Positions 2,644-15,111 of a DNA stretch of 64,000 nt are shown piece by piece. Position numbers and translations under genes: made by a program. The notes beneath the pieces are model-generated. The model saw nothing but the letters and a program-made list of their open reading frames with translations. It was not told where the DNA came from and ran no database searches. The stretch lies in the sequence record LT603033.1; one strand, 5' to 3'. Position 1 is the stretch's first letter; the number at the start of each line of letters is the position of its first letter.

Positions 2644-3149
2644 GTTTATTAAATGCACGCGAATTAGTTGAGATGTATGAGATTTTGTCTTCATATAAAA
2701 ATTCTCATGGAGATGTGATTCTCGACAAAAAGTTCCATGTCAGTGTTGAACATATATCAAATATAGATATGATTTCTTTGGTGGAAAGTAATAAGTCAGG
2801 TCTTGAACGCGATATCATGCGTTTGATTTATATTCCCAAACCATCATATACTAATGATAGTTCAATTAGTAATGAGACATTCATGTATAGTCCTGGTACG
2901 GATTCTACTATAGTATCGCTGTCCAATAAATCAATGGGTACTTTCCAATTCATCTATACCAGTACTGATAACATTGAAGAAATTGAATTTCAAAACAATA
3001 CATTAAGTCCATGTAGTAGTGTTATAACCTTTATGTCATATCTATGGTCAACTAAAACAAGTGCTGTTGTATATAGTTCAAATTATACACAAGATAGTAT
3101 TGTTGAATCATATAAAGTTCTAAAGGAATACTATGAAAATAACAAATGA
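2640..3149 (+). CDS. Hypothetical protein, FQ-motif family
   Basis: EEIEFQNNT. Confidence 0.7.
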   Translation: MSLLNARELVEMYEILSSYKNSHGDVILDKKFHVSVEHISNIDMISLVESNKSGLERDIMRLIYIPKPSYTNDSSISNETFMYSPGTDSTIVSLSNKSMGTFQFIYTSTDNIEEIEFQNNTLSPCSSVITFMSYLWSTKTSAVVYSSNYTQDSIVESYKVLKEYYENNK

Positions 3150-3714
3150 TTTTATTAAAAGTGTAGTACACCCTATGCTTAGTATTATGAAAAAAATACA
3201 GAATCTACCGGAAGATAACGATTACAAGTTTAATCGTTTTGATTCAGATGTGTTTTGTATTGAAATTGAAATTAATAACAATCGCAATTTACATTTAAAA
3301 TTCAAAGAATCGTCAAGTCCGTACTACAACTTTGATATGAATTTTAAAATAGATACTGACATTGAAGAAAACGTAATATCAAATCATACTAGCAAAAATG
3401 GTTTTATGCATAGAACTACTATGTACAATAATAAAAATAGTATTATATCTAAATGGAATCATCAATTCACTAAAATTTGTGAAATTGAATATAGTGATTT
3501 TGGTGAAGAGAATTACTTTCAGTTAAGTACAATTCATGAACTTCCACCGTATGATTATGTTAAAACATGGTTTGATATTCATAATATAATTGATGATGCA
3601 ATCAAACTTCCATTTGGTGTGTCAATATCATATACTGCTCCTAAAACATTTGTTTTTACTGAAGATATGATTATGAAAAAGATATGGGCAATTATCCCAC
3701 TTATGATGGATTAA
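3133..3714 (+). CDS. Hypothetical protein, FQ-motif family
   Basis: AAGGA RBS; EENYFQLST. Confidence 0.75.
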   Translation: MKITNDFIKSVVHPMLSIMKKIQNLPEDNDYKFNRFDSDVFCIEIEINNNRNLHLKFKESSSPYYNFDMNFKIDTDIEENVISNHTSKNGFMHRTTMYNNKNSIISKWNHQFTKICEIEYSDFGEENYFQLSTIHELPPYDYVKTWFDIHNIIDDAIKLPFGVSISYTAPKTFVFTEDMIMKKIWAIIPLMMD

Positions 3715-8454: not shown

Positions 8455-9306
8455 ATGTTAGATATTTCAGATTTTCTTAATTTTAAAAAGTATTCAGTAC
8501 TTGAACATATCAACGAATTTCTGAATTCCCCAACACCATTTGGTATCAGTACATCAGATACATACGATGGATATAGAATCTTCCCATGCAATGACTTTCA
8601 AATTTCTGTCAAAAAAGGTACTTCAAAAGAAGTTGCAATTCGTGATGTAGTACTGTATAGCGATTCTTCTATTTATTACTGTCATGATGTGAACAATTTT
8701 GAATCTCTTTCAACACCTAATTGTTCATACTACAAATCCAATGACACAATGATGTACAAAGAAGAACACATCAATGGGGTTTCGTTTTATAAAACCGCCA
8801 GCGATAAATCATATACATCTAGAGATGATTTTGGAAAATATACATGCACTATGTATACGGATGATGAAAAATCAAATCGTATTCATTCATTCGAATCCAA
8901 ATTCAAAGAGAGTGAAGTTTCAAATATCACTATACAAGAAAAGGTTACCGAAGATGGTGTTGTGTATCGTAGTACTGCATTCTTCCGAATGAAAGATATT
9001 GCAACTGGTCGCCCAATGATGTATAATATTGACATATTCATGAAAGGTGAATCATCGGAAGTGGTGATTAGTACTGGTTATCGTGCCAACTACACATTTA
9101 CAATGGAATCACCTGATGCATCGTTGGTACATCTATTCAACAATTTATATACTTTCCAATTCGAACTTGGTTTCGAAACAAATGAATATCAAATATTTGA
9201 GATATTAAAAAGTAATATTATTAATAAATTGGAATATTACTTCAAGTTAGGCGGGAAGATGAACATAGTTAATACTATGTTACGCAACATAAAAGAAACA
9301 ATGTAA
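8455..9306 (+). CDS. Hypothetical protein
   Basis: GAGGA RBS; 283 aa ORF. Confidence 0.8.
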   Translation: MLDISDFLNFKKYSVLEHINEFLNSPTPFGISTSDTYDGYRIFPCNDFQISVKKGTSKEVAIRDVVLYSDSSIYYCHDVNNFESLSTPNCSYYKSNDTMMYKEEHINGVSFYKTASDKSYTSRDDFGKYTCTMYTDDEKSNRIHSFESKFKESEVSNITIQEKVTEDGVVYRSTAFFRMKDIATGRPMMYNIDIFMKGESSEVVISTGYRANYTFTMESPDASLVHLFNNLYTFQFELGFETNEYQIFEILKSNIINKLEYYFKLGGKMNIVNTMLRNIKETM

Positions 9307-9322
9307 TTATGGAGGATTTGGT

Positions 9323-9616
9323 ATGGATACTAAATTCAAACTTATTTTCAAAACAGAGCCGTATATCCCTTATACTGGTGAACGTTTTATTCCACCTGGT
9401 GCAGTGGAGATTGAGCATCCTGATGGAACAAAATTGTATCTCAGCCCATGTTCGTATGAACGTGCAGTTGAAATGCTAATTATGAATAGCAAACATTGTA
9501 GTAATAAGTACATTAGCTACTTATACAATGAACATATTCTAGAATTTAATGATGAGAATATGTTCATGCTGGCTATTAACGATTTCAATAACTGGCACGA
9601 AAGTTTGACTATTTGA
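9323..9616 (+). CDS. Hypothetical protein, FQ-motif-like
   Basis: GGAGG RBS; DENMFMLAI. Confidence 0.75.
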   Translation: MDTKFKLIFKTEPYIPYTGERFIPPGAVEIEHPDGTKLYLSPCSYERAVEMLIMNSKHCSNKYISYLYNEHILEFNDENMFMLAINDFNNWHESLTI

Positions 9617-9626
9617 TAAAATATTG

Positions 9627-9654
9627 TGGACATGACAATTCCTTGTGATATAAT
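9627..9654 (+). promoter_or_regulatory. GGACA-class promoter
   Basis: TGGACA-16-TATAAT with TGA before the -10. Confidence 0.7.
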
Positions 9655-9687
9655 GTTCACATCTTTTTTTGATAAATGGAGATATAG

Positions 9688-10074
9688 ATGAATACAAGTT
9701 CTGTTCTAAAAGCTATTGGTGGTGTACTTCTGATTGAAGTCCAGGGTGAACCTAAGCTATGTTGCTTAGAAGACATGAAGAATACTAAACACTTCAGTAC
9801 TGGTCAGATTTTCAATGCCATTCGTATTCTAAATGACAAATCCATTGCTGATTATGGAAAAGTTTGGCCTGTATATCAAAATGCTGATGGTGATATCAGT
9901 ACTGATTGGAAAACAATTGAGGCGGTACGACAAAGTTGTGAGAGTGATTGGGACTTCATTGTTGAAGTTTGTGATCAACTACAAGAAGATGTTCCAGAAA
10001 TTGTCGAACGAAAAGAAGTCCTAGCACGACTTGAAAAATTCCGTCACGGAACACTACAGTATGACACAATCTAA
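9688..10074 (+). CDS. Hypothetical protein
   Basis: GGAG RBS. Confidence 0.8.
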   Translation: MNTSSVLKAIGGVLLIEVQGEPKLCCLEDMKNTKHFSTGQIFNAIRILNDKSIADYGKVWPVYQNADGDISTDWKTIEAVRQSCESDWDFIVEVCDQLQEDVPEIVERKEVLARLEKFRHGTLQYDTI

Positions 10075-10123
10075 TCTGCTTATTAAAAATATCTAATTAA
10101 CATTATATAAAAGGAATTTAAAA

Positions 10124-10429
10124 ATGGAAGACAATGGAATGAAATTTGATATGTTTGAAGGTGTACCAGAGTTCGATTTCAATAAACTTGAAAATGGTGA
10201 AGAATCAGAACTAGTAAGTGTTACACTAAAATCAGATACCAAAAAGAAATATTCCCCATCAGTTCGTTCACGTTCTCAAGAAGAATATGAAACCTTCATT
10301 GAGAGTATTCATTACGAAACGTTCCATCATGCAGATGGTACTCCGTATGAAGTTCGTGTTACAGTACTGAAGCCTGAAGTAAACCCAATGGAAAATCTAC
10401 GTCCTGTTTACTGCTGGGCAAGCCACTAA
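10124..10429 (+). CDS. Hypothetical acidic protein
   Basis: AAGGA RBS. Confidence 0.75.
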   Translation: MEDNGMKFDMFEGVPEFDFNKLENGEESELVSVTLKSDTKKKYSPSVRSRSQEEYETFIESIHYETFHHADGTPYEVRVTVLKPEVNPMENLRPVYCWASH

Positions 10430-10435
10430 TAAACC

Positions 10436-10468
10436 AAAGGACGGGATATAATATCTCGTCTTTTTTTT
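10436..10468 (+). terminator. Intrinsic terminator
   Basis: GACGGGATA-taa-TATCTCGTC plus T8. Confidence 0.85.
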
Positions 10469-10480
10469 GTCTGGAGATAT

Positions 10481-11329
10481 ATGAAACTTTATCTAATCGT
10501 TGACTACAATAAGGGTTATTATGACTACGCAGAAGAATCTGAAGGGTATTGCTCGTCTACTAATGTCAATGTACGCACCAGTAGTACACATGAGCATGAA
10601 TCTATTACAAACCTAAAAGATTTCATCGCATATCGAGCATTTGAAAAGAATTTCTGTCGTAGTAGATATTCGAAGTTTGAGTACCCGTTAATTGATGTTC
10701 CTGATGAATTGATGTTCCAGTTAATGCTCACTGGAGTACAAGATTATGATTACATCGCGTACAATCACATTACTAAGAAAATTTATATCGGTACGTCAAC
10801 ACATGACATTTCTATGTATGCATCATGCCCAGATGATCGAATGAATGATAGAAAATCATACTATAGTGGATCAGTTGGTTTAAATGATTCATTAAATGAA
10901 AATTTATTCTTTGAGTACGAGTTTGATAATCATCGAGGGAAAAAAGACCGAGAAGATTATTGTACTGAAATTGATAGTACCAATGGATATGAAGAAGTGA
11001 AAGAAGCGATAATGCCATATATCCTTGACAAGTACTACAAAGATTTTCAGTACTGTAGTAATTTTCTAATCCGAAATTCTATCATAATCGGTCGTCAAAG
11101 TACTGCATTCTCTAAGTACTACAATGATTCCCCTGTTGCTGAAAATGAAAACTGTAATATTCTCTCAATCCCACGTGAAGATATGGTATTCATGTTCACA
11201 TCTTTCATTGAAGATGATGAGTTGTATGTAAAAAACAAGCACAGGTTCATGCCAAGTAAGATTGAGGTTATGAGAAGCTTAAGTGCAGATATCTTAACTA
11301 ATTTCACTGAAAAAACAGAATACAACTGA
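10481..11329 (+). CDS. Hypothetical protein, FQ-motif family
   Basis: GGAG RBS; DELMFQLML. Confidence 0.8.
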   Translation: MKLYLIVDYNKGYYDYAEESEGYCSSTNVNVRTSSTHEHESITNLKDFIAYRAFEKNFCRSRYSKFEYPLIDVPDELMFQLMLTGVQDYDYIAYNHITKKIYIGTSTHDISMYASCPDDRMNDRKSYYSGSVGLNDSLNENLFFEYEFDNHRGKKDREDYCTEIDSTNGYEEVKEAIMPYILDKYYKDFQYCSNFLIRNSIIIGRQSTAFSKYYNDSPVAENENCNILSIPREDMVFMFTSFIEDDELYVKNKHRFMPSKIEVMRSLSADILTNFTEKTEYN

Positions 11330-11355
11330 GACATACCATAAGTTTATGATATAAT
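11328..11355 (+). promoter_or_regulatory. GGACA-class promoter upstream of candidate ncRNA
   Basis: GAGACA-16-TATAAT with TGA before the -10. Confidence 0.65.
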
Positions 11356-11359
11356 GTAA

Positions 11360-11392
11360 GGTGACAGCAGAATATGTTGTCGCCTTTTTTTT
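11360..11392 (+). terminator. Terminator-like hairpin immediately after the -10 box
   Basis: GGTGACAGCA-gaata-TGTTGTCGCC plus T8. Confidence 0.8.
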
Positions 11393-12007
11393 AATCCTGA
11401 AAGGTTCCATATGGAAATGATTAAAGCCTAATCCACTCGAAAAGTAGAGGGTAGATGAGTAGTCCTTTCAGTACGAACAGCAAATGAAACCCGTTAGATG
11501 ATGGCATAGTTTGAACCACTCACGGCAATGCGGCTGTATAAAGAACTCCAATAGGATAAAGAGAGTTCCTCGATAGACATATAAGGATCGCACCTTACCA
11601 ATTATCTAAGGGAGATTTCATGAGAAATTTGCGGTCGGAATTATACAATATAGTTGCGTCCAAATTTTGTGAAATCAAATACAAGTACTGGTCATATGGT
11701 ATTTGTATTATGTGTCGGGATGTTTAAGACCGACGACCGTTGCTACAAGAACCGCGATAGAGAGAAACAGAGCAACCCGCTTTCGTCTCGTAAGAGAATT
11801 CGTGATATGAACTATGTGAAGGCCACCAGCGTCAAACTTTTTTGTTCTTTCCCCTGCGGGGGGATGAAATATGCTCAAGCAAACCCCGTCAATATTAATT
11901 AAAAGAAAATAGTACTTGTAGAATTAGACATGCGTAGCATGGTAATTCTACTGATGTTGATGGAATCAACGTCACGTATATTCATTGATGTTTCCATAGG
12001 AATAATG
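11393..12007 (+). ncRNA. Candidate large structured non-coding RNA or cis-regulatory leader (family unknown; ends approximate)
   Basis: No credible ORF; about 41% GC over 11401-11880; more than 12 helices including long-range pairs, a three-way junction and a GNRA-capped hairpin. Confidence 0.7.
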
Positions 12008-12550
12008 ATGGCATTTATTAGAAAACAAAAAACTTTTACCTATAAGACTTTGGATTTTGTTGATTGTGAAAACCAATTACAAGATGAAGATAACTTTACA
12101 GGATTTGTTGTTATTAAAGAAAAAGGATGCATTTCGTATATAAAGGAATTACAGAACGGCATTGAAGTTACTTCAGTCAAATTACTTCCTACACAAAAAC
12201 CAACAATATTAAAAGCACAGTATGGTAATTATTTCGAGGAAAGATATAGTAATAATTTAATAAGTGTTAAGGCTCATATTATAAAAGGAGAACTAGAAGG
12301 AGAATATAGAAAATACAACCCACAAGGAAAATGTGTTTGGGTTAAATACTTCAATTCAGGAAATGATGTAACATCTGAAATAATTGAGTTTTTAGGTTTA
12401 ACATGTACCCCTGAAACTCTTCATGATTACAAATTTAATACTGAAGAAGAGTTTAATCTGATGATGCGTTATGGTTCACATTTTAAATTTTTATATGAAT
12501 ATAACATTGACAGTAGTACTTTTGATAAGATAGTACAGAACTGTCTCTAA
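12008..12550 (+). CDS. Hypothetical protein (MORN-like repeats; FQ-motif-like C-terminus)
   Basis: AGGA RBS at 11998; GELEGEYRKY..GK..W..YF..G; EEEFNLMMRYG. Confidence 0.75.
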   Translation: MAFIRKQKTFTYKTLDFVDCENQLQDEDNFTGFVVIKEKGCISYIKELQNGIEVTSVKLLPTQKPTILKAQYGNYFEERYSNNLISVKAHIIKGELEGEYRKYNPQGKCVWVKYFNSGNDVTSEIIEFLGLTCTPETLHDYKFNTEEEFNLMMRYGSHFKFLYEYNIDSSTFDKIVQNCL

Positions 12551-12566
12551 CAAAAGGAATTATATA

Positions 12567-13088
12567 ATGTCGAAGAAGGATGCTTCGAAAAAACATTCAG
12601 TACATTTTAGTACTGGTAAAGATAACTGGACAACTCCAAAAGATTTCTTTGAAGAGTTAGATGAGTTATGGGGATTTACGCTTGATGCTGCTTGTGTTGA
12701 TGAGACTGCATTATGTGAGAATTATTTTACACCAAATGATGATTCTCTTTCACAGGATTGGGGAAAGAATATAGTTTGGTTGAACCCTCCATATAGTGAT
12801 TTGAAAACATGGTTATCTAAAGCAGTAGATGCGTATAATAAAGGGGCAACTGTATTAATTCTTGTACCATCAAGAACGGATACTATAGCCTTTCAGGATT
12901 ATGCTGCGAAAGTTTGTGATTGTATTTGTTTTATTAAGGGAAGGTTACGATTTGGTATCCCAGAAGAACCAGAGAAGAAAACAGATTCAGCACCATTTCC
13001 TTCGTGTCTGATAGTACTGGATAAGTACTTAACCACTGCTAAAATCAATTATCTTAAATCTCTTGGGTTGGTGATGAAGAATTTATGA
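12567..13088 (+). CDS. Phage-type DNA N6-adenine methyltransferase (small Dam-like family)
   Basis: W.TP..FF, FTLDAA, VWLNPPYS, LVPSRTDT, IKGRLRF, APFPS. Confidence 0.85.
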   Translation: MSKKDASKKHSVHFSTGKDNWTTPKDFFEELDELWGFTLDAACVDETALCENYFTPNDDSLSQDWGKNIVWLNPPYSDLKTWLSKAVDAYNKGATVLILVPSRTDTIAFQDYAAKVCDCICFIKGRLRFGIPEEPEKKTDSAPFPSCLIVLDKYLTTAKINYLKSLGLVMKNL

Positions 13089-13618
13089 AAGAAACATGTG
13101 TATTAACGTTTGGTCGTATTAATCCTGTACATCGTGGACATGGTTTAGTTTTTGAAAAGGCCAAAACATTACAAGAACAGTACAATGCTGATTTAAAAAT
13201 ATATCTAAGCACCAGTACTGACAATATAAAAAACCCACTCCCACCTGAACTAAAAATGTATTATACAGAGGGATTCTATCCTTCAGTGCAAGAGAACATC
13301 TACACAGAAGACAATCTATTTGATATAATGAGAGAACTGGATGGAAAGTACTTAGATGTTCTTTTCATTTGTGGTTCTGACCGTATTGATTCTTTTCAAA
13401 AAACTCTTGACATGTACAATGGTAAGTTGTATAATTTTTGTAGTATAAAAGCAATTCAAGCAGGTATTGACCGTAATGTAAGTCAATATAGCTCAACACA
13501 AATGCGTAACTTCGCAAAAAATGAAGATTTTGATAGTTTTCGTGAGTTTTTACCTGGAAATGACGAGGACTTAAAAATACAATTATTTGAAGACGTTATA
13601 AAATACATGAGGAAATAA
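13085..13618 (+). CDS. HxGH cytidylyl/nucleotidyltransferase-like protein
   Basis: TFGRINPVHRGH, CGSDR, YSSTQMR. Confidence 0.8.
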   Translation: MKETCVLTFGRINPVHRGHGLVFEKAKTLQEQYNADLKIYLSTSTDNIKNPLPPELKMYYTEGFYPSVQENIYTEDNLFDIMRELDGKYLDVLFICGSDRIDSFQKTLDMYNGKLYNFCSIKAIQAGIDRNVSQYSSTQMRNFAKNEDFDSFREFLPGNDEDLKIQLFEDVIKYMRK

Positions 13619-13620
13619 TT

Positions 13621-13914
13621 ATGTCAGTACTGTTCAAAACCAATCCAGTACTTTGGGATCAAAATGAGCAATCAGGATTTCGTTCCATCCATGTTGAATA
13701 CAAAGGTAATACTGTAGTTGCAATTATTGCTAACAAAACTCTAGGAAACTGGACTGCACAGGTTGTTCCTATGGGATATTCTTACACATCTGATGAGGTT
13801 CAATTCCTGGCTGAACTATATCGTCAAGTGCCGTTTATCATTAATGTACTAGAAGGTAATGATACATTATCACATGCAGATGTGATTAATTTTCTTGGAA
13901 ACTTGCATGTGTGA
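13621..13914 (+). CDS. Hypothetical protein
   Basis: GAGGA RBS. Confidence 0.75.
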   Translation: MSVLFKTNPVLWDQNEQSGFRSIHVEYKGNTVVAIIANKTLGNWTAQVVPMGYSYTSDEVQFLAELYRQVPFIINVLEGNDTLSHADVINFLGNLHV

Positions 13915-14194
13915 TGAAATAAATCTTACAGGATATTTTTTACAAGAATCAATGATTAAATTTAGTGATAAATTTTCAGTACTGGATGGTATCGAAATGT
14001 GGCATGTCAAACCACTGTTCCACACTTTCAGTAAAGAGCACAAAATGTTATTGACTGAAGCCAGTAAATCAAATAACATATGTGAAATCAAAATTGGTGT
14101 AAATGTCTATAAAGGGATGGTTATCTTTTTTGACAATAACAGCAACTACTTTTATATTGTTAAGGAGCATTACGTTGACAAATACAAATACTAA
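13907..14194 (+). CDS. Hypothetical protein
   Basis: Coupled ORF. Confidence 0.65.
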   Translation: MCDEINLTGYFLQESMIKFSDKFSVLDGIEMWHVKPLFHTFSKEHKMLLTEASKSNNICEIKIGVNVYKGMVIFFDNNSNYFYIVKEHYVDKYKY

Positions 14195-14789
14195 TACATA
14201 TTTCCGTTATCTTCGCTTAGGTCTTTCCCTACGTCCGATCCGTGGAAAGTGCGATTCACTCGCTGACCTTGACTATGCATATGCATTACATCATGAAGGT
14301 GTACAGTATGTATTGGGTGATTATGGTGAATTTGAAGAAACAAATGACAGTACTGGAATTAATGCTGGTGTAGAAAATCTTAACAACATTGCTAACAGTT
14401 CTCGCCATGACATTGTGTTACAGATTCAAAACTTTATTGAGCAGCACACAGGTAAACGTGTTTGGTGCTATGTCGGTACGGATGCACAAATGTCAATTTC
14501 ATTCGGTAACGATGAAGGATATGTTGCACAGCTTATTATGGATTTTGAATCTGAAGAGAAGTTTTTAGAATTCAAAGAAAAGATTATTCAGTCACTTGTT
14601 GATATGGGTATCCCCGAAGATAAAATGCCAGAAGTTCAAAACATTGATGAATTTGTTTTGATTCCATCTGATGAGAAATATGATGCAATGTTTACTGCTC
14701 TTAATATTCCAGGAGTTATTGTGGAGTACTTTGATGATGGTGATGATAGTATCTATATCGATCTAGATGACGATGACGACGATGAATAA
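14175..14789 (+). CDS. Hypothetical acidic protein (TTG start after TAAGGAG)
   Basis: Strong RBS 14161-14167; poly-Asp C-terminus. Confidence 0.7.
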   Translation: MTNTNTNTYFRYLRLGLSLRPIRGKCDSLADLDYAYALHHEGVQYVLGDYGEFEETNDSTGINAGVENLNNIANSSRHDIVLQIQNFIEQHTGKRVWCYVGTDAQMSISFGNDEGYVAQLIMDFESEEKFLEFKEKIIQSLVDMGIPEDKMPEVQNIDEFVLIPSDEKYDAMFTALNIPGVIVEYFDDGDDSIYIDLDDDDDDE

Positions 14790-14794
14790 TGTAC

Positions 14795-14823
14795 ATAGCC
14801 CGACATAAGTTCGGGCTATTTTT
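14795..14823 (+). terminator. Intrinsic terminator
   Basis: ATAGCCCGA-cataagt-TCGGGCTAT plus T run. Confidence 0.85.
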
Positions 14824-14835
14824 GTAAGGGGATAT

Positions 14836-15111
14836 ATGAATTATAAAGTTCTACAATATACATACAGTGTTTTATTTGATTTACATCACAATGGAAGATA
14901 TCTCAATACAATACGAGAAAACACATTCACTCATACTATCTGGATTAATCACTTAATAATGATACGTGAATATTTTGTTAATAGTGAGATAATCATTCGT
15001 GGTAAAAAACAGAAGATAGAACAAGTTAATAGTTTTGGTGGTAAATTAGTACTATCATTTATAGATAGTAATACTAATGAAAGATATAGTATAGATTTGG
15101 TGGATATATGA
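14836..15111 (+). CDS. Small hypothetical, TYK-array paralog
   Basis: LQYTYSVLFDL. Confidence 0.7.
   Translation: MNYKVLQYTYSVLFDLHHNGRYLNTIRENTFTHTIWINHLIMIREYFVNSEIIIRGKKQKIEQVNSFGGKLVLSFIDSNTNERYSIDLVDI

What the first reader, a model, noticed from the sequence alone, without database searches (positions are those of the whole stretch)
11360..12007. Candidate novel large structured ncRNA in a gene-dense phage genome
Seen in sequence: the longest stretch without a credible ORF in the window (about 650 nt) has about 41% GC over 11401-11880 (hand count 199/480) against about 32% background, and sits behind a promoter (11328-11355). It shows nested pairing. Long-range helix: CATAGTTTG 11505-13 / TGAACTATG 11808-16. 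Inside it: TGTATAA 11535-41 / TTATACA 11641-47, which encloses GAACTC/GAGTTC (11543-68) and a three-way junction (GATCGC/GCGGTC 11586-11636 with arms CCTTA/TAAGG and AGATTTC/GAAATTT). Further helices: 11-bp AATACAAGTAC/GTATTTGTATT (11678-11709), GTCGG/CCGAC (11714-34) whose loop GATGT could pair with GCGTC 11656-60 as a pseudoknot, GTTGCT/AGCAAC (11739-76), GNRA-capped TCTC-GTAA-GAGA (11786-97) and TCCCC/GGGGA (11850-64). A T-rich tract follows the long-range helix at about 11838-11850. Established: phages carry large ornate RNAs such as ROOL and GOLLD. Inference: this is a functional folded RNA, possibly of an undescribed class. I could not match it to tRNA, tmRNA, RNase P or group I intron cores.
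Basis: partly seen in the sequence, partly recalled or inferred. Interest (0 to 1): 0.88.

Follow-up and report, generated by a model that had tools for sequence, protein, structure and literature searches.

The report
Multi-copy pseudoknotted RNA of jumbo phages
The gene-free gap is a real gene for a roughly 500-nucleotide, heavily pseudoknotted non-coding RNA that RaK2-like jumbo phages carry in three to five dispersed copies, matches no catalogued RNA family, and has an unknown job.

Summary
The window is an Asteriusvirus jumbo coliphage, 100% identical to vB_Eco_slurp01. Window 11326-11900 is one self-contained unit: a sigma-70 promoter with an extended -10, a leader hairpin, a 5' RNA domain (11427-11676), a 3' RNA domain (11678-11812) and a conserved 3' block (11845-11900).

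The same unit occurs 4 times in 121Q-type genomes, 5 times in Munch, GAP32, BF, XbC2 and Kaldavass, and 3 times in RaK2. The copies are co-oriented, lie in unannotated gaps, and each has its own promoter.

Across 54-56 sequences the proposed pairs are 82-91% Watson-Crick/GU, against 31-51% in register-shifted controls. Compensatory double changes are four- to eight-fold in excess. At least three pseudoknots covary; one 6-7 bp loop-to-3' pairing has 14 sequence variants.

No Rfam 15 family matches, no ORF is conserved, and RNA libraries from two studies hold contigs over it.

Its long-range helix, its TGTATAA/TTATACA helix and two junction arms are not conserved.

The biochemical function is unknown. 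I favour a trans-acting folded RNA, acting as scaffold, ribonucleoprotein core or ribozyme. A cis leader role and an origin-primer role are not excluded.

The parts
11326..11355 (+). Promoter of the RNA gene: GAGACA (11328-33), 16-nt spacer, TG-extended TATAAT (11350-55). The expected start is about 11361-11363.
   Evidence: The scan scores 10 of 12 with TG. A G(G/A)(G/A)ACA...TGnTATAAT promoter lies 25-75 nt upstream of the core in all 29 copies inspected. TGnTATAAT stands 45-56 nt before each of the four 121Q copies.
11358..11393 (+). 12-bp hairpin plus U8. It is the intrinsic terminator of the upstream gene (10481-11329). Because the promoter precedes it, it is also the 5' leader hairpin of the RNA.
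   Evidence: Terminator scan. ARNold terminators are annotated at the same place in G17, GAP32 and Munch. Orthologues at this locus keep the promoter-hairpin-U-run order.
11405..11416 (+). P1, a small variable hairpin in the leader (UUCC/GGAA).
   Evidence: A hairpin of different sequence sits at this place in nearly all copies. It was not counted formally because the alignment is poor there.
11427..11676 (+). 5' domain.
- P2 11428-30/52-54 and 11434-38/47-51
- P3 11459-61/72-74, flanked by tandem G.A
- P4 11477-81/11533-37
- P5 11491-94/11522-25
- P6 11497-11504/11516-21
- P7 11543-48/63-68
- P8 11582-86/93-97
- P9 11614-20/70-76
- Pseudoknot PK1 11528-30/11578-80
- P7 loop with J8/9, 11554-57/11604-07
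- Possible P8 loop with P9 internal loop, 11587-92/11630-35
   Evidence: 82.4% of cells pair, against 31-41% when partners are slid. There are 359 double-change cells against 55-98. Blind MI-APC ranks these pairs at the top. P8 forms in 31 of 33 sequence variants. The P7-loop contact is weaker: 4.33 against 3.65.
11643..11668 (+). Movable module UACAAUAUAG(U/A)U(G/C)CGUCCAAAUUUUG inside the P9 arm.
   Evidence: The same roughly 25-nt motif sits in the P9 arm in some paralogues and in the P15 arm of the 3' domain in others. 121Q copy L005 has both.
11678..11812 (+). 3' domain.
- P10 11678-88/11699-11709
- P11 11714-18/30-34
- P12 11739-43/72-76
- P13 11753-57/11800-04
- P14 11760-64/80-84
- P15 11786-89/94-97
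- P12 crosses P13/P14, forming a pseudoknot
- The P10 loop 11692-97 pairs with 11805-10, forming a second pseudoknot
   Evidence: 90.7% of cells pair, against 43-51% when slid. There are 398 double-change cells against 45-77. P12, P13 and P14 are 100% paired with compensatory changes. The loop-to-3' pairing scores 6.96 for cognate pairs against 4.05 +/- 1.36 for non-cognate pairs, with 14 variants. CM R1 scores 105 bits, E = 1.7e-22, and this is the only hit in the window.
11823..11835 (+). First copy of the direct repeat A-Y-C-(N)-N-CGUCA-R, here within CCACCAGCGUCAA.
   Evidence: CGUCA is invariant in 56 sequences. Positions 11826 and 11835 change in parallel with 11884 and 11892 of the second copy, giving the same letters rather than complementary ones.
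11838..11843 (+). U-tract. In three of the five paralogue groups a GC-rich hairpin plus U7 (an intrinsic terminator) stands here. This copy and its orthologues have no hairpin.
   Evidence: Alignment A2, columns 207-245. The terminator scan finds nothing here in the window.
11845..11900 (+). Conserved 3' block. It holds hairpin P16 (11845-54/11859-68, CCCC/GGGG core), the near-invariant GGGGGAUGAA, the second CGUCA-R repeat (11883-92) and a TATAAT-like or TATAAAT-like hexamer.
   Evidence: It is present in all copies, including RaK2. In the 121Q genome it occurs exactly 4 times, always next to an RNA copy and on the + strand. The hairpin shows only C-to-U one-sided changes and no compensatory pairs. 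RNA-library contigs run across it.

Best explanation
Window 11326-11900 is a stand-alone gene for a large structured non-coding RNA. It is about 480-540 nt long, on the + strand.

Shown:
- It is one of four paralogues in this phage, and of 3-5 in the RaK2-like jumbo phages examined.
- Each copy has its own host-type promoter (sigma-70 with an extended -10).
- The RNA folds into two domains with at least 16 helices and at least three covarying pseudoknots.
- Many junction and loop nucleotides are invariant across the genera.
- A movable docking-type module sits on either of two arms.

Inferred:
- Host RNA polymerase makes the RNA early in infection.
- The RNA folds into a compact globular shape in which the P9 and P15 arms point to the same place.
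- It acts in trans as a scaffold, the core of a ribonucleoprotein, or a ribozyme.
- The two parallel-evolving CGUCA-R repeats and the GGGGGGAUGAA block at the 3' end are a recognition site for a phage or host factor.

The confidence figure refers to 'a functional structured ncRNA gene family'. For a trans-acting role specifically I would say about 0.6. I would give no particular biochemical activity more than about 0.3.
For: - Copy number. Four + strand copies at 70-73% identity in 121Q. Five full-length copies in each of five other genomes. Three in RaK2.
- Synteny. The copy upstream of the Dam methylase operon is syntenic in Munch, Kaldavass, XbC2, BF, GAP32 and RaK2.
- Covariation. Blind MI-APC puts Watson-Crick antiparallel pairs at the top.
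- Strand. Many G-U pairs fit only the + strand RNA.
- Promoters. A conserved promoter precedes every copy examined.
- Independence from neighbours. One locus lies between minus-strand genes, so the unit is not tied to a downstream gene.
- No coding signal. No conserved ORF; indels are not multiples of three.
- Expression. RNA libraries of two studies hold contigs over 11368-11938 and over a paralogue. In X5 and X6 nothing lies over 12152-14900.
- No known family. No Rfam hit.
Against: - There is no direct transcript mapping. The RNA evidence is assembled contigs, which cannot give ends, strand or level, and DNA carry-over is not excluded.
- The single-sequence folding z-score is only -1.35.
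- The leader holds a full terminator hairpin right after the expected start, which might abort many transcripts of this copy.
- The 3' block shows no compensatory covariation and lies after a terminator in three of five paralogue groups, so it may act as DNA.
- The sequences come from one phage clade with strong phylogenetic structure, which inflates shuffle-based statistics. The slid-register controls are the fairer comparison.
- No partner protein, target or activity is known.
Confidence: 0.9

Rival explanations
1. Cis-acting leader. The folded RNA works on its own transcription complex or transcript, as processive antitermination or attenuation in the manner of HK022 put or Bacillus EAR. 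It would decide whether polymerase passes the terminator that follows it and reads into downstream genes.
For: - The RNA starts right at a strong promoter.
- In three of five paralogue groups an intrinsic terminator follows it, and then a conserved block.
- In four of five loci the next genes are on the same strand.
- The window's copy has no terminator and faces the Dam operon.
Against: - One conserved locus is followed by minus-strand genes, in both 121Q and GAP32.
- The downstream genes share nothing.
- In X5 and X6 no contig covers the downstream operon although the RNA is covered.
- Known antitermination RNAs, from my own knowledge, are far smaller and simpler.
- A further promoter-like element lies downstream of the unit in many copies.
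Confidence: 0.15
2. Replication-origin unit. The transcript primes or licenses DNA synthesis, like ColE1 RNA II or the T4 origin R-loops. The invariant G-run and the CGUCA-R direct repeats of the 3' block would be the hybrid-forming site and the protein-binding site.
For: - The copies are co-oriented and evenly spread. In GAP32 the gaps are 64, 79, 84, 79 and 53 kb. For five random points on a circle, P(minimum gap of 53 kb or more) is about 0.005 by my calculation.
- The 3' block behaves like a sequence-specific element without RNA covariation, and it contains direct repeats that change in parallel.
- It lies after the terminator in several paralogues.
Against: - There is no GC-skew inflection at any of the four 121Q copies; skew follows gene strand.
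- Multiple covarying pseudoknots and invariant loops are far more structure than known primer RNAs need.
- Even spacing could also arise because deletions between direct repeats that lie close together would be tolerated, so such pairs would be lost.
- All genomes are syntenic, so the spacing is effectively a single observation.
Confidence: 0.1
3. Not an RNA. The unit is a dispersed DNA repeat, such as a remnant of a mobile element, recombination hot spots or protein-binding arrays, or it hides small protein genes.
For: - Some automatic annotations place tiny hypothetical CDSs in the gap.
- Copies within Asteriusvirus and within RaK2 cluster by genome, as gene conversion between repeats would give.
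Against: - Compensatory changes keep pairing in more than 60 pairs, with G-U pairs valid on one strand only.
- Loop-to-strand pseudoknots covary.
- No ORF is conserved, and indels break every frame.
- No transposase, integrase or terminal repeats lie nearby.
Confidence: 0.03

Closest known systems
ROOL and GOLLD (large ornate RNAs of phages and prophages; Rfam families)
   Same: Both are phage-borne, several hundred nucleotides long, rich in pseudoknots and conserved junctions, independent of neighbouring genes, and of unknown function.
   Different: No sequence or structure match to either model at E up to 10. The hosts here are Enterobacterales, with one Xanthomonas isolate, not Lactobacillales, rumen or lake organisms. 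There are 3-5 diverged paralogues per genome, and no tRNA neighbours. Homo-oligomeric cages, reported for ROOL and GOLLD (10.1101/2024.12.08.627333), were not tested here.
ncRNA001-004 of Pseudomonas jumbo phage PA5oct (RNA-seq defined; PMC7318152)
   Same: They are unexplained 236-619 nt non-coding transcripts on the + strand of a jumbo phage distantly related to the RaK2 group. Two of them make up 1-5% of phage reads each, depending on the stage of infection.
   Different: No detectable homology. nhmmer finds nothing in the ncRNA002 locus. The 3'-domain CM gives one 23.6-bit hit in the whole genome, outside any annotated ncRNA and without profile support. No structure or paralogy was reported for the PA5oct RNAs.
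Hammerhead ribozyme core
   Same: The P2/P3/P4 junction reads C-A-G-A-U-G-A-G / stem / C-G-A-A. This resembles CUGAUGA-stem II-GAAA with tandem G.A pairs next to an invariant G-C.
   Different: Many copies have GUUGAG where the hammerhead's A6 would stand. The position equivalent to A14 covaries as a base pair (A-U 33, U-A 10). The three-way junction is not closed. There is no Rfam hammerhead hit. It is best read as a shared local G.A motif.
Group I introns of T4-like phages
   Same: Similar size, a pseudoknotted core, peripheral arms that swap tertiary modules, and a GUUCNNNGAUAGAC string reminiscent of the R element (recalled from memory).
   Different: It is not inserted in a gene and it has its own promoter. 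There is no hit to Intron_gpI even at E = 10.
ColE1 RNA II and T4 origin transcripts
   Same: A roughly 0.5 kb transcript from a strong promoter, with a G-run near its 3' part, at dispersed co-oriented sites.
   Different: This RNA is much more conserved and more pseudoknotted. There is no skew signal and no evidence of hybrid formation.
csRNA catalogue of viral intergenic regions (Fremin et al. 2023; PMC10690425)
   Same: It was mined from IMG/VR, which contains these phages, so sub-motifs of this RNA may be among its unnamed entries.
   Different: The catalogued motifs are 29-151 nt long, so the whole RNA, its domains and its paralogy are not described there. I could not check the supplementary lists.

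Membership tests
Any Rfam 15 family (4227 models, including ROOL, GOLLD, OLE, tmRNA, RNase P, group I/II introns, 6S, hammerhead) | Covariance-model score at or above the family's gathering threshold | tested here: not met
   There are 0 hits in the whole window at gathering thresholds. At E up to 10 over 11200-12200, only terminator-like sRNA noise appears at 11324-11392, plus two weak hits inside the next gene. Fifteen other copies give no recurrent hit.
Group I intron | It interrupts a gene, and a P3-P9 core is recognised by RF00028 | tested here: not met
   The element lies between a terminator and the next gene and has its own promoter. There is no RF00028 match.
Hammerhead ribozyme | Invariant CUGANGA and GAAA strands in a closed three-way junction | tested here: not met
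   GAUGAG alternates with GUUGAG. The A14 equivalent (11477) covaries with 11537. P4 does not return to P2.
tRNA / tmRNA | Cloverleaf or tRNA-like domain found by ARAGORN | tested here: not met
   ARAGORN finds 0 genes in the window.
ROOL/GOLLD-type RNA-only assemblies | Homo-oligomeric cage held by intermolecular loop contacts | not testable with these tools
   This needs native gels, SEC-MALS or cryo-EM of the transcript.
PA5oct ncRNAs | Sequence or structure homology to ncRNA001-004 | tested here: not met
Processive-antitermination leader RNAs (put, EAR) | Always in the 5' leader of a co-directional operon whose terminators it overrides | tested here: inconclusive
   This holds at 4 of 5 loci. 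The locus next to endonuclease VII is followed by minus-strand genes. Read-through itself was not testable.
Origin primer RNA (ColE1 RNA II type) | Persistent RNA-DNA hybrid at a mapped origin; strand-asymmetry switch | tested here: inconclusive
   There is no skew inflection at the copies, but in this genome skew follows transcription. Hybrid formation was not testable.
The new family itself (RaK2-like phage RNA) | Promoter, 5' domain, 3' double pseudoknot, then the CGUCA-R / GGGGGGAUGAA block | tested here: met
   The window copy matches the nhmmer profile end to end (E = 7e-166) and CM R1 (105 bits). All helices can form in it.

The most novel reading that the evidence does not exclude
A previously unrecognised class of large catalytic or self-assembling RNA. 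Jumbo phages of E. coli, Klebsiella, Salmonella and related hosts would make several diverged paralogues early in infection. These would fold into a compact double-pseudoknot architecture. They would then act as a ribozyme or build an RNA or ribonucleoprotein particle, possibly from several paralogues together, that the phage needs for takeover or replication.
Probability: 0.3. Interest if true: 0.92.

Novelty: categorically new. Interest (0 to 1): 0.82.

Why it matters
Large RNAs with this much conserved tertiary structure are rare. The few known classes (ribosomal RNA, RNase P, group I and II introns, OLE, ROOL, GOLLD) have each taught new biochemistry.

This one sits in phages of E. coli, Salmonella and Klebsiella that grow on laboratory strains. 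Unlike ROOL or GOLLD, it can therefore be deleted, tagged, probed and imaged in a tractable system.

Its 3-5 anciently diverged paralogues give unusually rich covariation for modelling. They also raise a new question: why does one genome keep several versions of one RNA?

The finding also corrects genome annotation. About 0.65-0.9 kb gaps in more than 60 deposited jumbo-phage genomes are left blank or filled with spurious small CDSs.

Tried and rejected
- Rfam at gathering and at permissive thresholds, on this copy and on 15 others: nothing.
- ARAGORN: nothing.
- Single-sequence folding: not significant on either strand, and the MFE fold disagrees with the covariation model because of the pseudoknots.
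- RNAalifold on the raw MAFFT alignment recovered only part of the structure.
- Homology to the PA5oct RNA-seq ncRNAs: rejected.
This is about what chance predicts. Only one was real: a 68.8-kb contig in a Buttiauxella MAG that is evidently phage DNA.
- Origin idea tested by GC skew: no inflection.
- A closing helix between the 5' leader CUGA and the 3' UCAG, judged by eye: not consistent across copies.
- A small ORF behind the SD-like UAAGGGAG, or in the GGGGGGAUGAAAAUG block: not conserved, with frame-breaking indels.
A 132-position model, R1, was used instead.
- Literature searches for an earlier description found none.

Full report
**What the window is.** The 711 bases around the finding are 100% identical to Escherichia phage vB_Eco_slurp01. 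They are 95-99.9% identical to nearly all of the other roughly 350-kb coliphages listed, among them PBECO4, 121Q, SP27 and G17; the records opened are assigned to the genus Asteriusvirus. In curated records the stretch is an unannotated gap. It lies between a hypothetical gene with an ARNold-predicted terminator and a small operon that encodes a hypothetical protein, an N6-adenine methyltransferase and a cytidylyltransferase.

**Checking the observation.** The gap is real: the upstream ORF stops at 11329 and the next annotated start lies near 12008. GC is 0.38-0.41 over 11300-11999, against 0.28-0.35 on either side. The promoter is real by consensus: GAGACA, a 16-nt spacer and a TG-extended TATAAT at 11328-11355, scoring 10 of 12. 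Straight after it comes a 12-bp hairpin plus eight U (11358-11393). This is the terminator of the upstream gene, and it necessarily also forms the 5' leader of anything started at that promoter. Folding the single sequence is not informative. The z-score is -1.35 on the + strand and -0.41 on the - strand.

- The 121Q genome holds four + strand copies at 70-73% identity, near 90, 193, 247 and 327 kb.
- Salmonella phage Munch, Erwinia phage Kaldavass, Xanthomonas phage XbC2, Serratia phage BF and Cronobacter phage GAP32 each hold five full-length copies.
- Klebsiella phage RaK2 holds three more diverged ones.
- The window holds one copy.
- Two pattern scans of IMG/VR found further copies only on contigs that are, or are pieces of, genomes of about 350-380 kb.
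- In 185,579 prokaryote genomes the only true hit was a phage-like contig binned into a Buttiauxella MAG.
- The copy studied here is syntenic: it sits upstream of the methylase operon in Munch, Kaldavass, XbC2, BF, GAP32 and RaK2.
- The other loci share no neighbours. None is next to a tRNA. One conserved locus is followed by minus-strand genes.
- All 29 copies inspected are preceded, 25-75 nt upstream of the conserved core, by a G(G/A)(G/A)ACA...TGnTATAAT promoter.

The unit is therefore a gene in its own right, not the leader of one particular operon.

**Structure.** I aligned 56 non-redundant copies and ranked all column pairs by mutual information with APC correction, without using any fold. 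The top of the list is almost entirely Watson-Crick pairs in antiparallel runs. From these and from inspection I built a model, and every helix can form in the window sequence.

*5' domain (11427-11676).* It holds helices P2 to P9. A 3-bp pseudoknot links 11528-30 to 11578-80 and crosses P4. The P7 loop contacts the strand just before the invariant UAAGGGAG.

*3' domain (11678-11812).* It holds P10 to P15 and two pseudoknots:
- GUUGC/GCAAC (11739-43/11772-76) crosses the coaxial pair P13/P14.
- The P10 loop (11692-97) pairs with 11805-10.

*Counts on the 3' domain.*
- 90.7% of cells are standard pairs, against 43-51% when the 3' partners are slid by 1-3 columns.
- There are 398 cells with changes on both sides, against 45-77.
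- The covariation score is 0.458, against 0.075-0.141.
- P12, P13 and P14 are 100% paired.

*Counts on the 5' domain.*
- 82.4% of cells are paired, against 31-41%.
- There are 359 double-change cells, against 55-98.
- The register I gave for P8 in that call was off by one. With the right register the hairpin forms in 31 of 33 sequence variants.

*Alignment-free test of the P10-loop pseudoknot.* Cognate loop and partner pairs score 6.96. Non-cognate pairs score 4.05 +/- 1.36. There are 14 distinct complementary variants, for example AUUGUAU/AUACAAU, GUCGAAU/AUUCGAC and UUCAUGU/ACAUGAA, and CUUGAAU/AUUCAAG in RaK2.

Frequent G-U pairs fix the RNA to the + strand.

A motif of about 25 nt, UACAAUAUAGAUCCGUCCAAAAUUUG, sits in the P9 arm in some paralogues and in the P15 arm in others. 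One copy has it in both. Large ribozymes move peripheral tertiary-contact modules in this way. It suggests that the two arms point to the same place in a compact fold; this is an inference.

- Correct: the hairpins at 11543-68, 11678-11709, 11714-34, 11739-76 and 11786-97, and probably the GATCGC/GCGGTC contact.
- Not conserved: the long-range helix 11505-13/11808-16, with cognate 5.02 against non-cognate 4.80. Also TGTATAA/TTATACA, CCTTA with the downstream TAAGG, and AGATTTC/GAAATTT.
- Not tested: the proposed GATGT/GCGTC pseudoknot.

**The 3' part is different in kind.** After the 3' domain comes an invariant CGUCA(G/A). In three of the five paralogue groups a GC hairpin with a U7 run, a textbook intrinsic terminator, follows it. 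The window's group lacks that hairpin. Then, in every copy, comes a block of about 55 nt: UUCAUUCCCCUGCGGGGGGAUGAAAAUGCCUCAACAAAUCUCGUCAG, followed by a TATAAT-like or TATAAAT-like hexamer.
- In 121Q this block occurs exactly four times, only beside the RNA copies.
- It shows no compensatory covariation. The only changes in its hairpin are C-to-U changes opposite the G-run.
- The two A-Y-C-(N)-CGUCA-R strings change in parallel, with the same letters rather than complementary ones.

I read the block as a sequence-specific recognition site. I cannot say whether it works in the RNA or in the DNA. For the window's copy, RNA-library contigs run through it.

**Expression.** Four RNA libraries from two studies were laid on 9000-14900: two wastewater metatranscriptomes and two 'whole organism metagenome' RNA-seq runs.
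- Contigs lie over 11368-11938, and over a second paralogue, seen as loose ends.
- In X5 and X6 contigs also lie over the upstream genes at lower word depth.
- Nothing at all lies over 12152-14900.

DNA carry-over would not be expected to stop there, so this is modest support for transcription. Contigs cannot give ends, strand or level.

**What it is not.**
- No Rfam 15 family matches this copy or 15 others, even at E up to 5-10.
- It is not a tRNA or tmRNA.
- The junction AGAUGAG-stem-CGAA looks like a hammerhead core, but it fails three defining features.
- It is not an intron, because it has its own promoter and lies between genes.
- The four RNA-seq-defined ncRNAs of the related jumbo phage PA5oct (PMC7318152) are not detectably homologous.
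- Literature searches found no earlier description.
- The large IMG/VR motif catalogue holds only motifs of 29-151 nt, so at most it holds fragments of this RNA.

**Evolution.** In the four genomes XbC2, Kaldavass, GAP32 and BF the five copies form five orthologous groups. Duplication therefore predates the split of those phages. The four Asteriusvirus copies cluster together, and so do the three RaK2 copies, although the window's copy is syntenic with group 1. That points to concerted evolution within a genome, through gene conversion or co-adaptation to a shared partner.

The copies are evenly spread. GAP32 gaps are 64, 79, 84, 79 and 53 kb, and P is about 0.005 for five random points on a circle (my calculation). 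Because the genomes are syntenic, this is effectively a single observation. It may simply reflect selection against deletions between direct repeats.

**How it most likely works.**

*Shown:* a promoter-bearing, multi-copy, strongly covarying, pseudoknotted RNA family.

*Inferred:* early synthesis by host polymerase, a compact fold, and action in trans as a scaffold, ribonucleoprotein core or ribozyme, with the 3' block as a docking site.

*Rivals:*
- A cis-acting antitermination or attenuation leader, about 0.15. It is favoured by the promoter-RNA-terminator order and disfavoured by the convergent locus and the unrelated downstream genes.
- An origin or primer unit, about 0.1. It is favoured by the spacing and the DNA-like 3' block and disfavoured by the absence of any skew inflection and by the complexity of the fold.
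- A non-RNA repeat, about 0.03.

**Verdict.** The element is a new family of large structured RNA, with no catalogued relative, in experimentally tractable phages. Its function is open.

Noticed in passing
window 11326-11393: The promoter's -10 hexamer ends 3 nt before the 12-bp terminator hairpin of the upstream gene. Transcripts of the RNA gene therefore begin inside or just before a complete hairpin plus U8. Orthologues at this locus keep the arrangement, while other paralogue groups have a leader hairpin without the U-run. This may attenuate this copy or protect its 5' end.
   Followed up: partly
window 11823-11835 and 11880-11892: Two direct repeats, A-Y-C-(N)-CGUCA-R, lie about 57 nt apart and change in parallel across phages (U/C at 11826 and 11884; G/A at 11835 and 11892). 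This looks like paired binding sites for one co-evolving factor.
   Followed up: partly
window 11893-11900, and the same place in other copies (A2 columns 296-305): A TATAAT-like, TATTAA-like or TATAAAT-like hexamer follows the second CGUCA-R in most copies. It resembles T4-type late promoters (from my own knowledge). About 60-70 nt further on, many copies have AAAATTCTTTGAC, a -35-like element with an A/T-rich upstream part.
   Followed up: no
L198 (DAMALH010000023.1, Buttiauxella sp. MAG, 68.8-kb contig), 2854-3429: A full-length copy of the RNA (E = 6.5e-80) lies on a contig binned as a bacterial MAG. It is almost certainly jumbo-phage DNA mis-binned into the MAG.
   Followed up: partly
phage records OR699181/OR699188 (Salmonella phage SD-2_S15, SD-15_S21), PQ464595 (Kaldavass) and several 2023-2025 Escherichia phage records: Automatic annotation places 2-7 tiny 'hypothetical protein' CDSs over the RNA gene. 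These are likely false genes.
   Followed up: no
121Q genome (L264-L281): TGnTATAAT occurs 85 times on the + strand and 16 times on the - strand. This is probably the phage's general class of host-polymerase promoters, to which the four RNA promoters belong.
   Followed up: no
Tree of copies: Copies within Asteriusvirus and within RaK2 are each other's closest relatives although they occupy loci that are orthologous to distinct groups in other genera. This indicates concerted evolution of the paralogues.
   Followed up: partly
window 12010-12187: Weak sub-threshold Rfam hits to RAGATH-27 (20.8 bits) and Hatchet (15.4 bits) fall inside the next coding region. I take them as noise.
   Followed up: no
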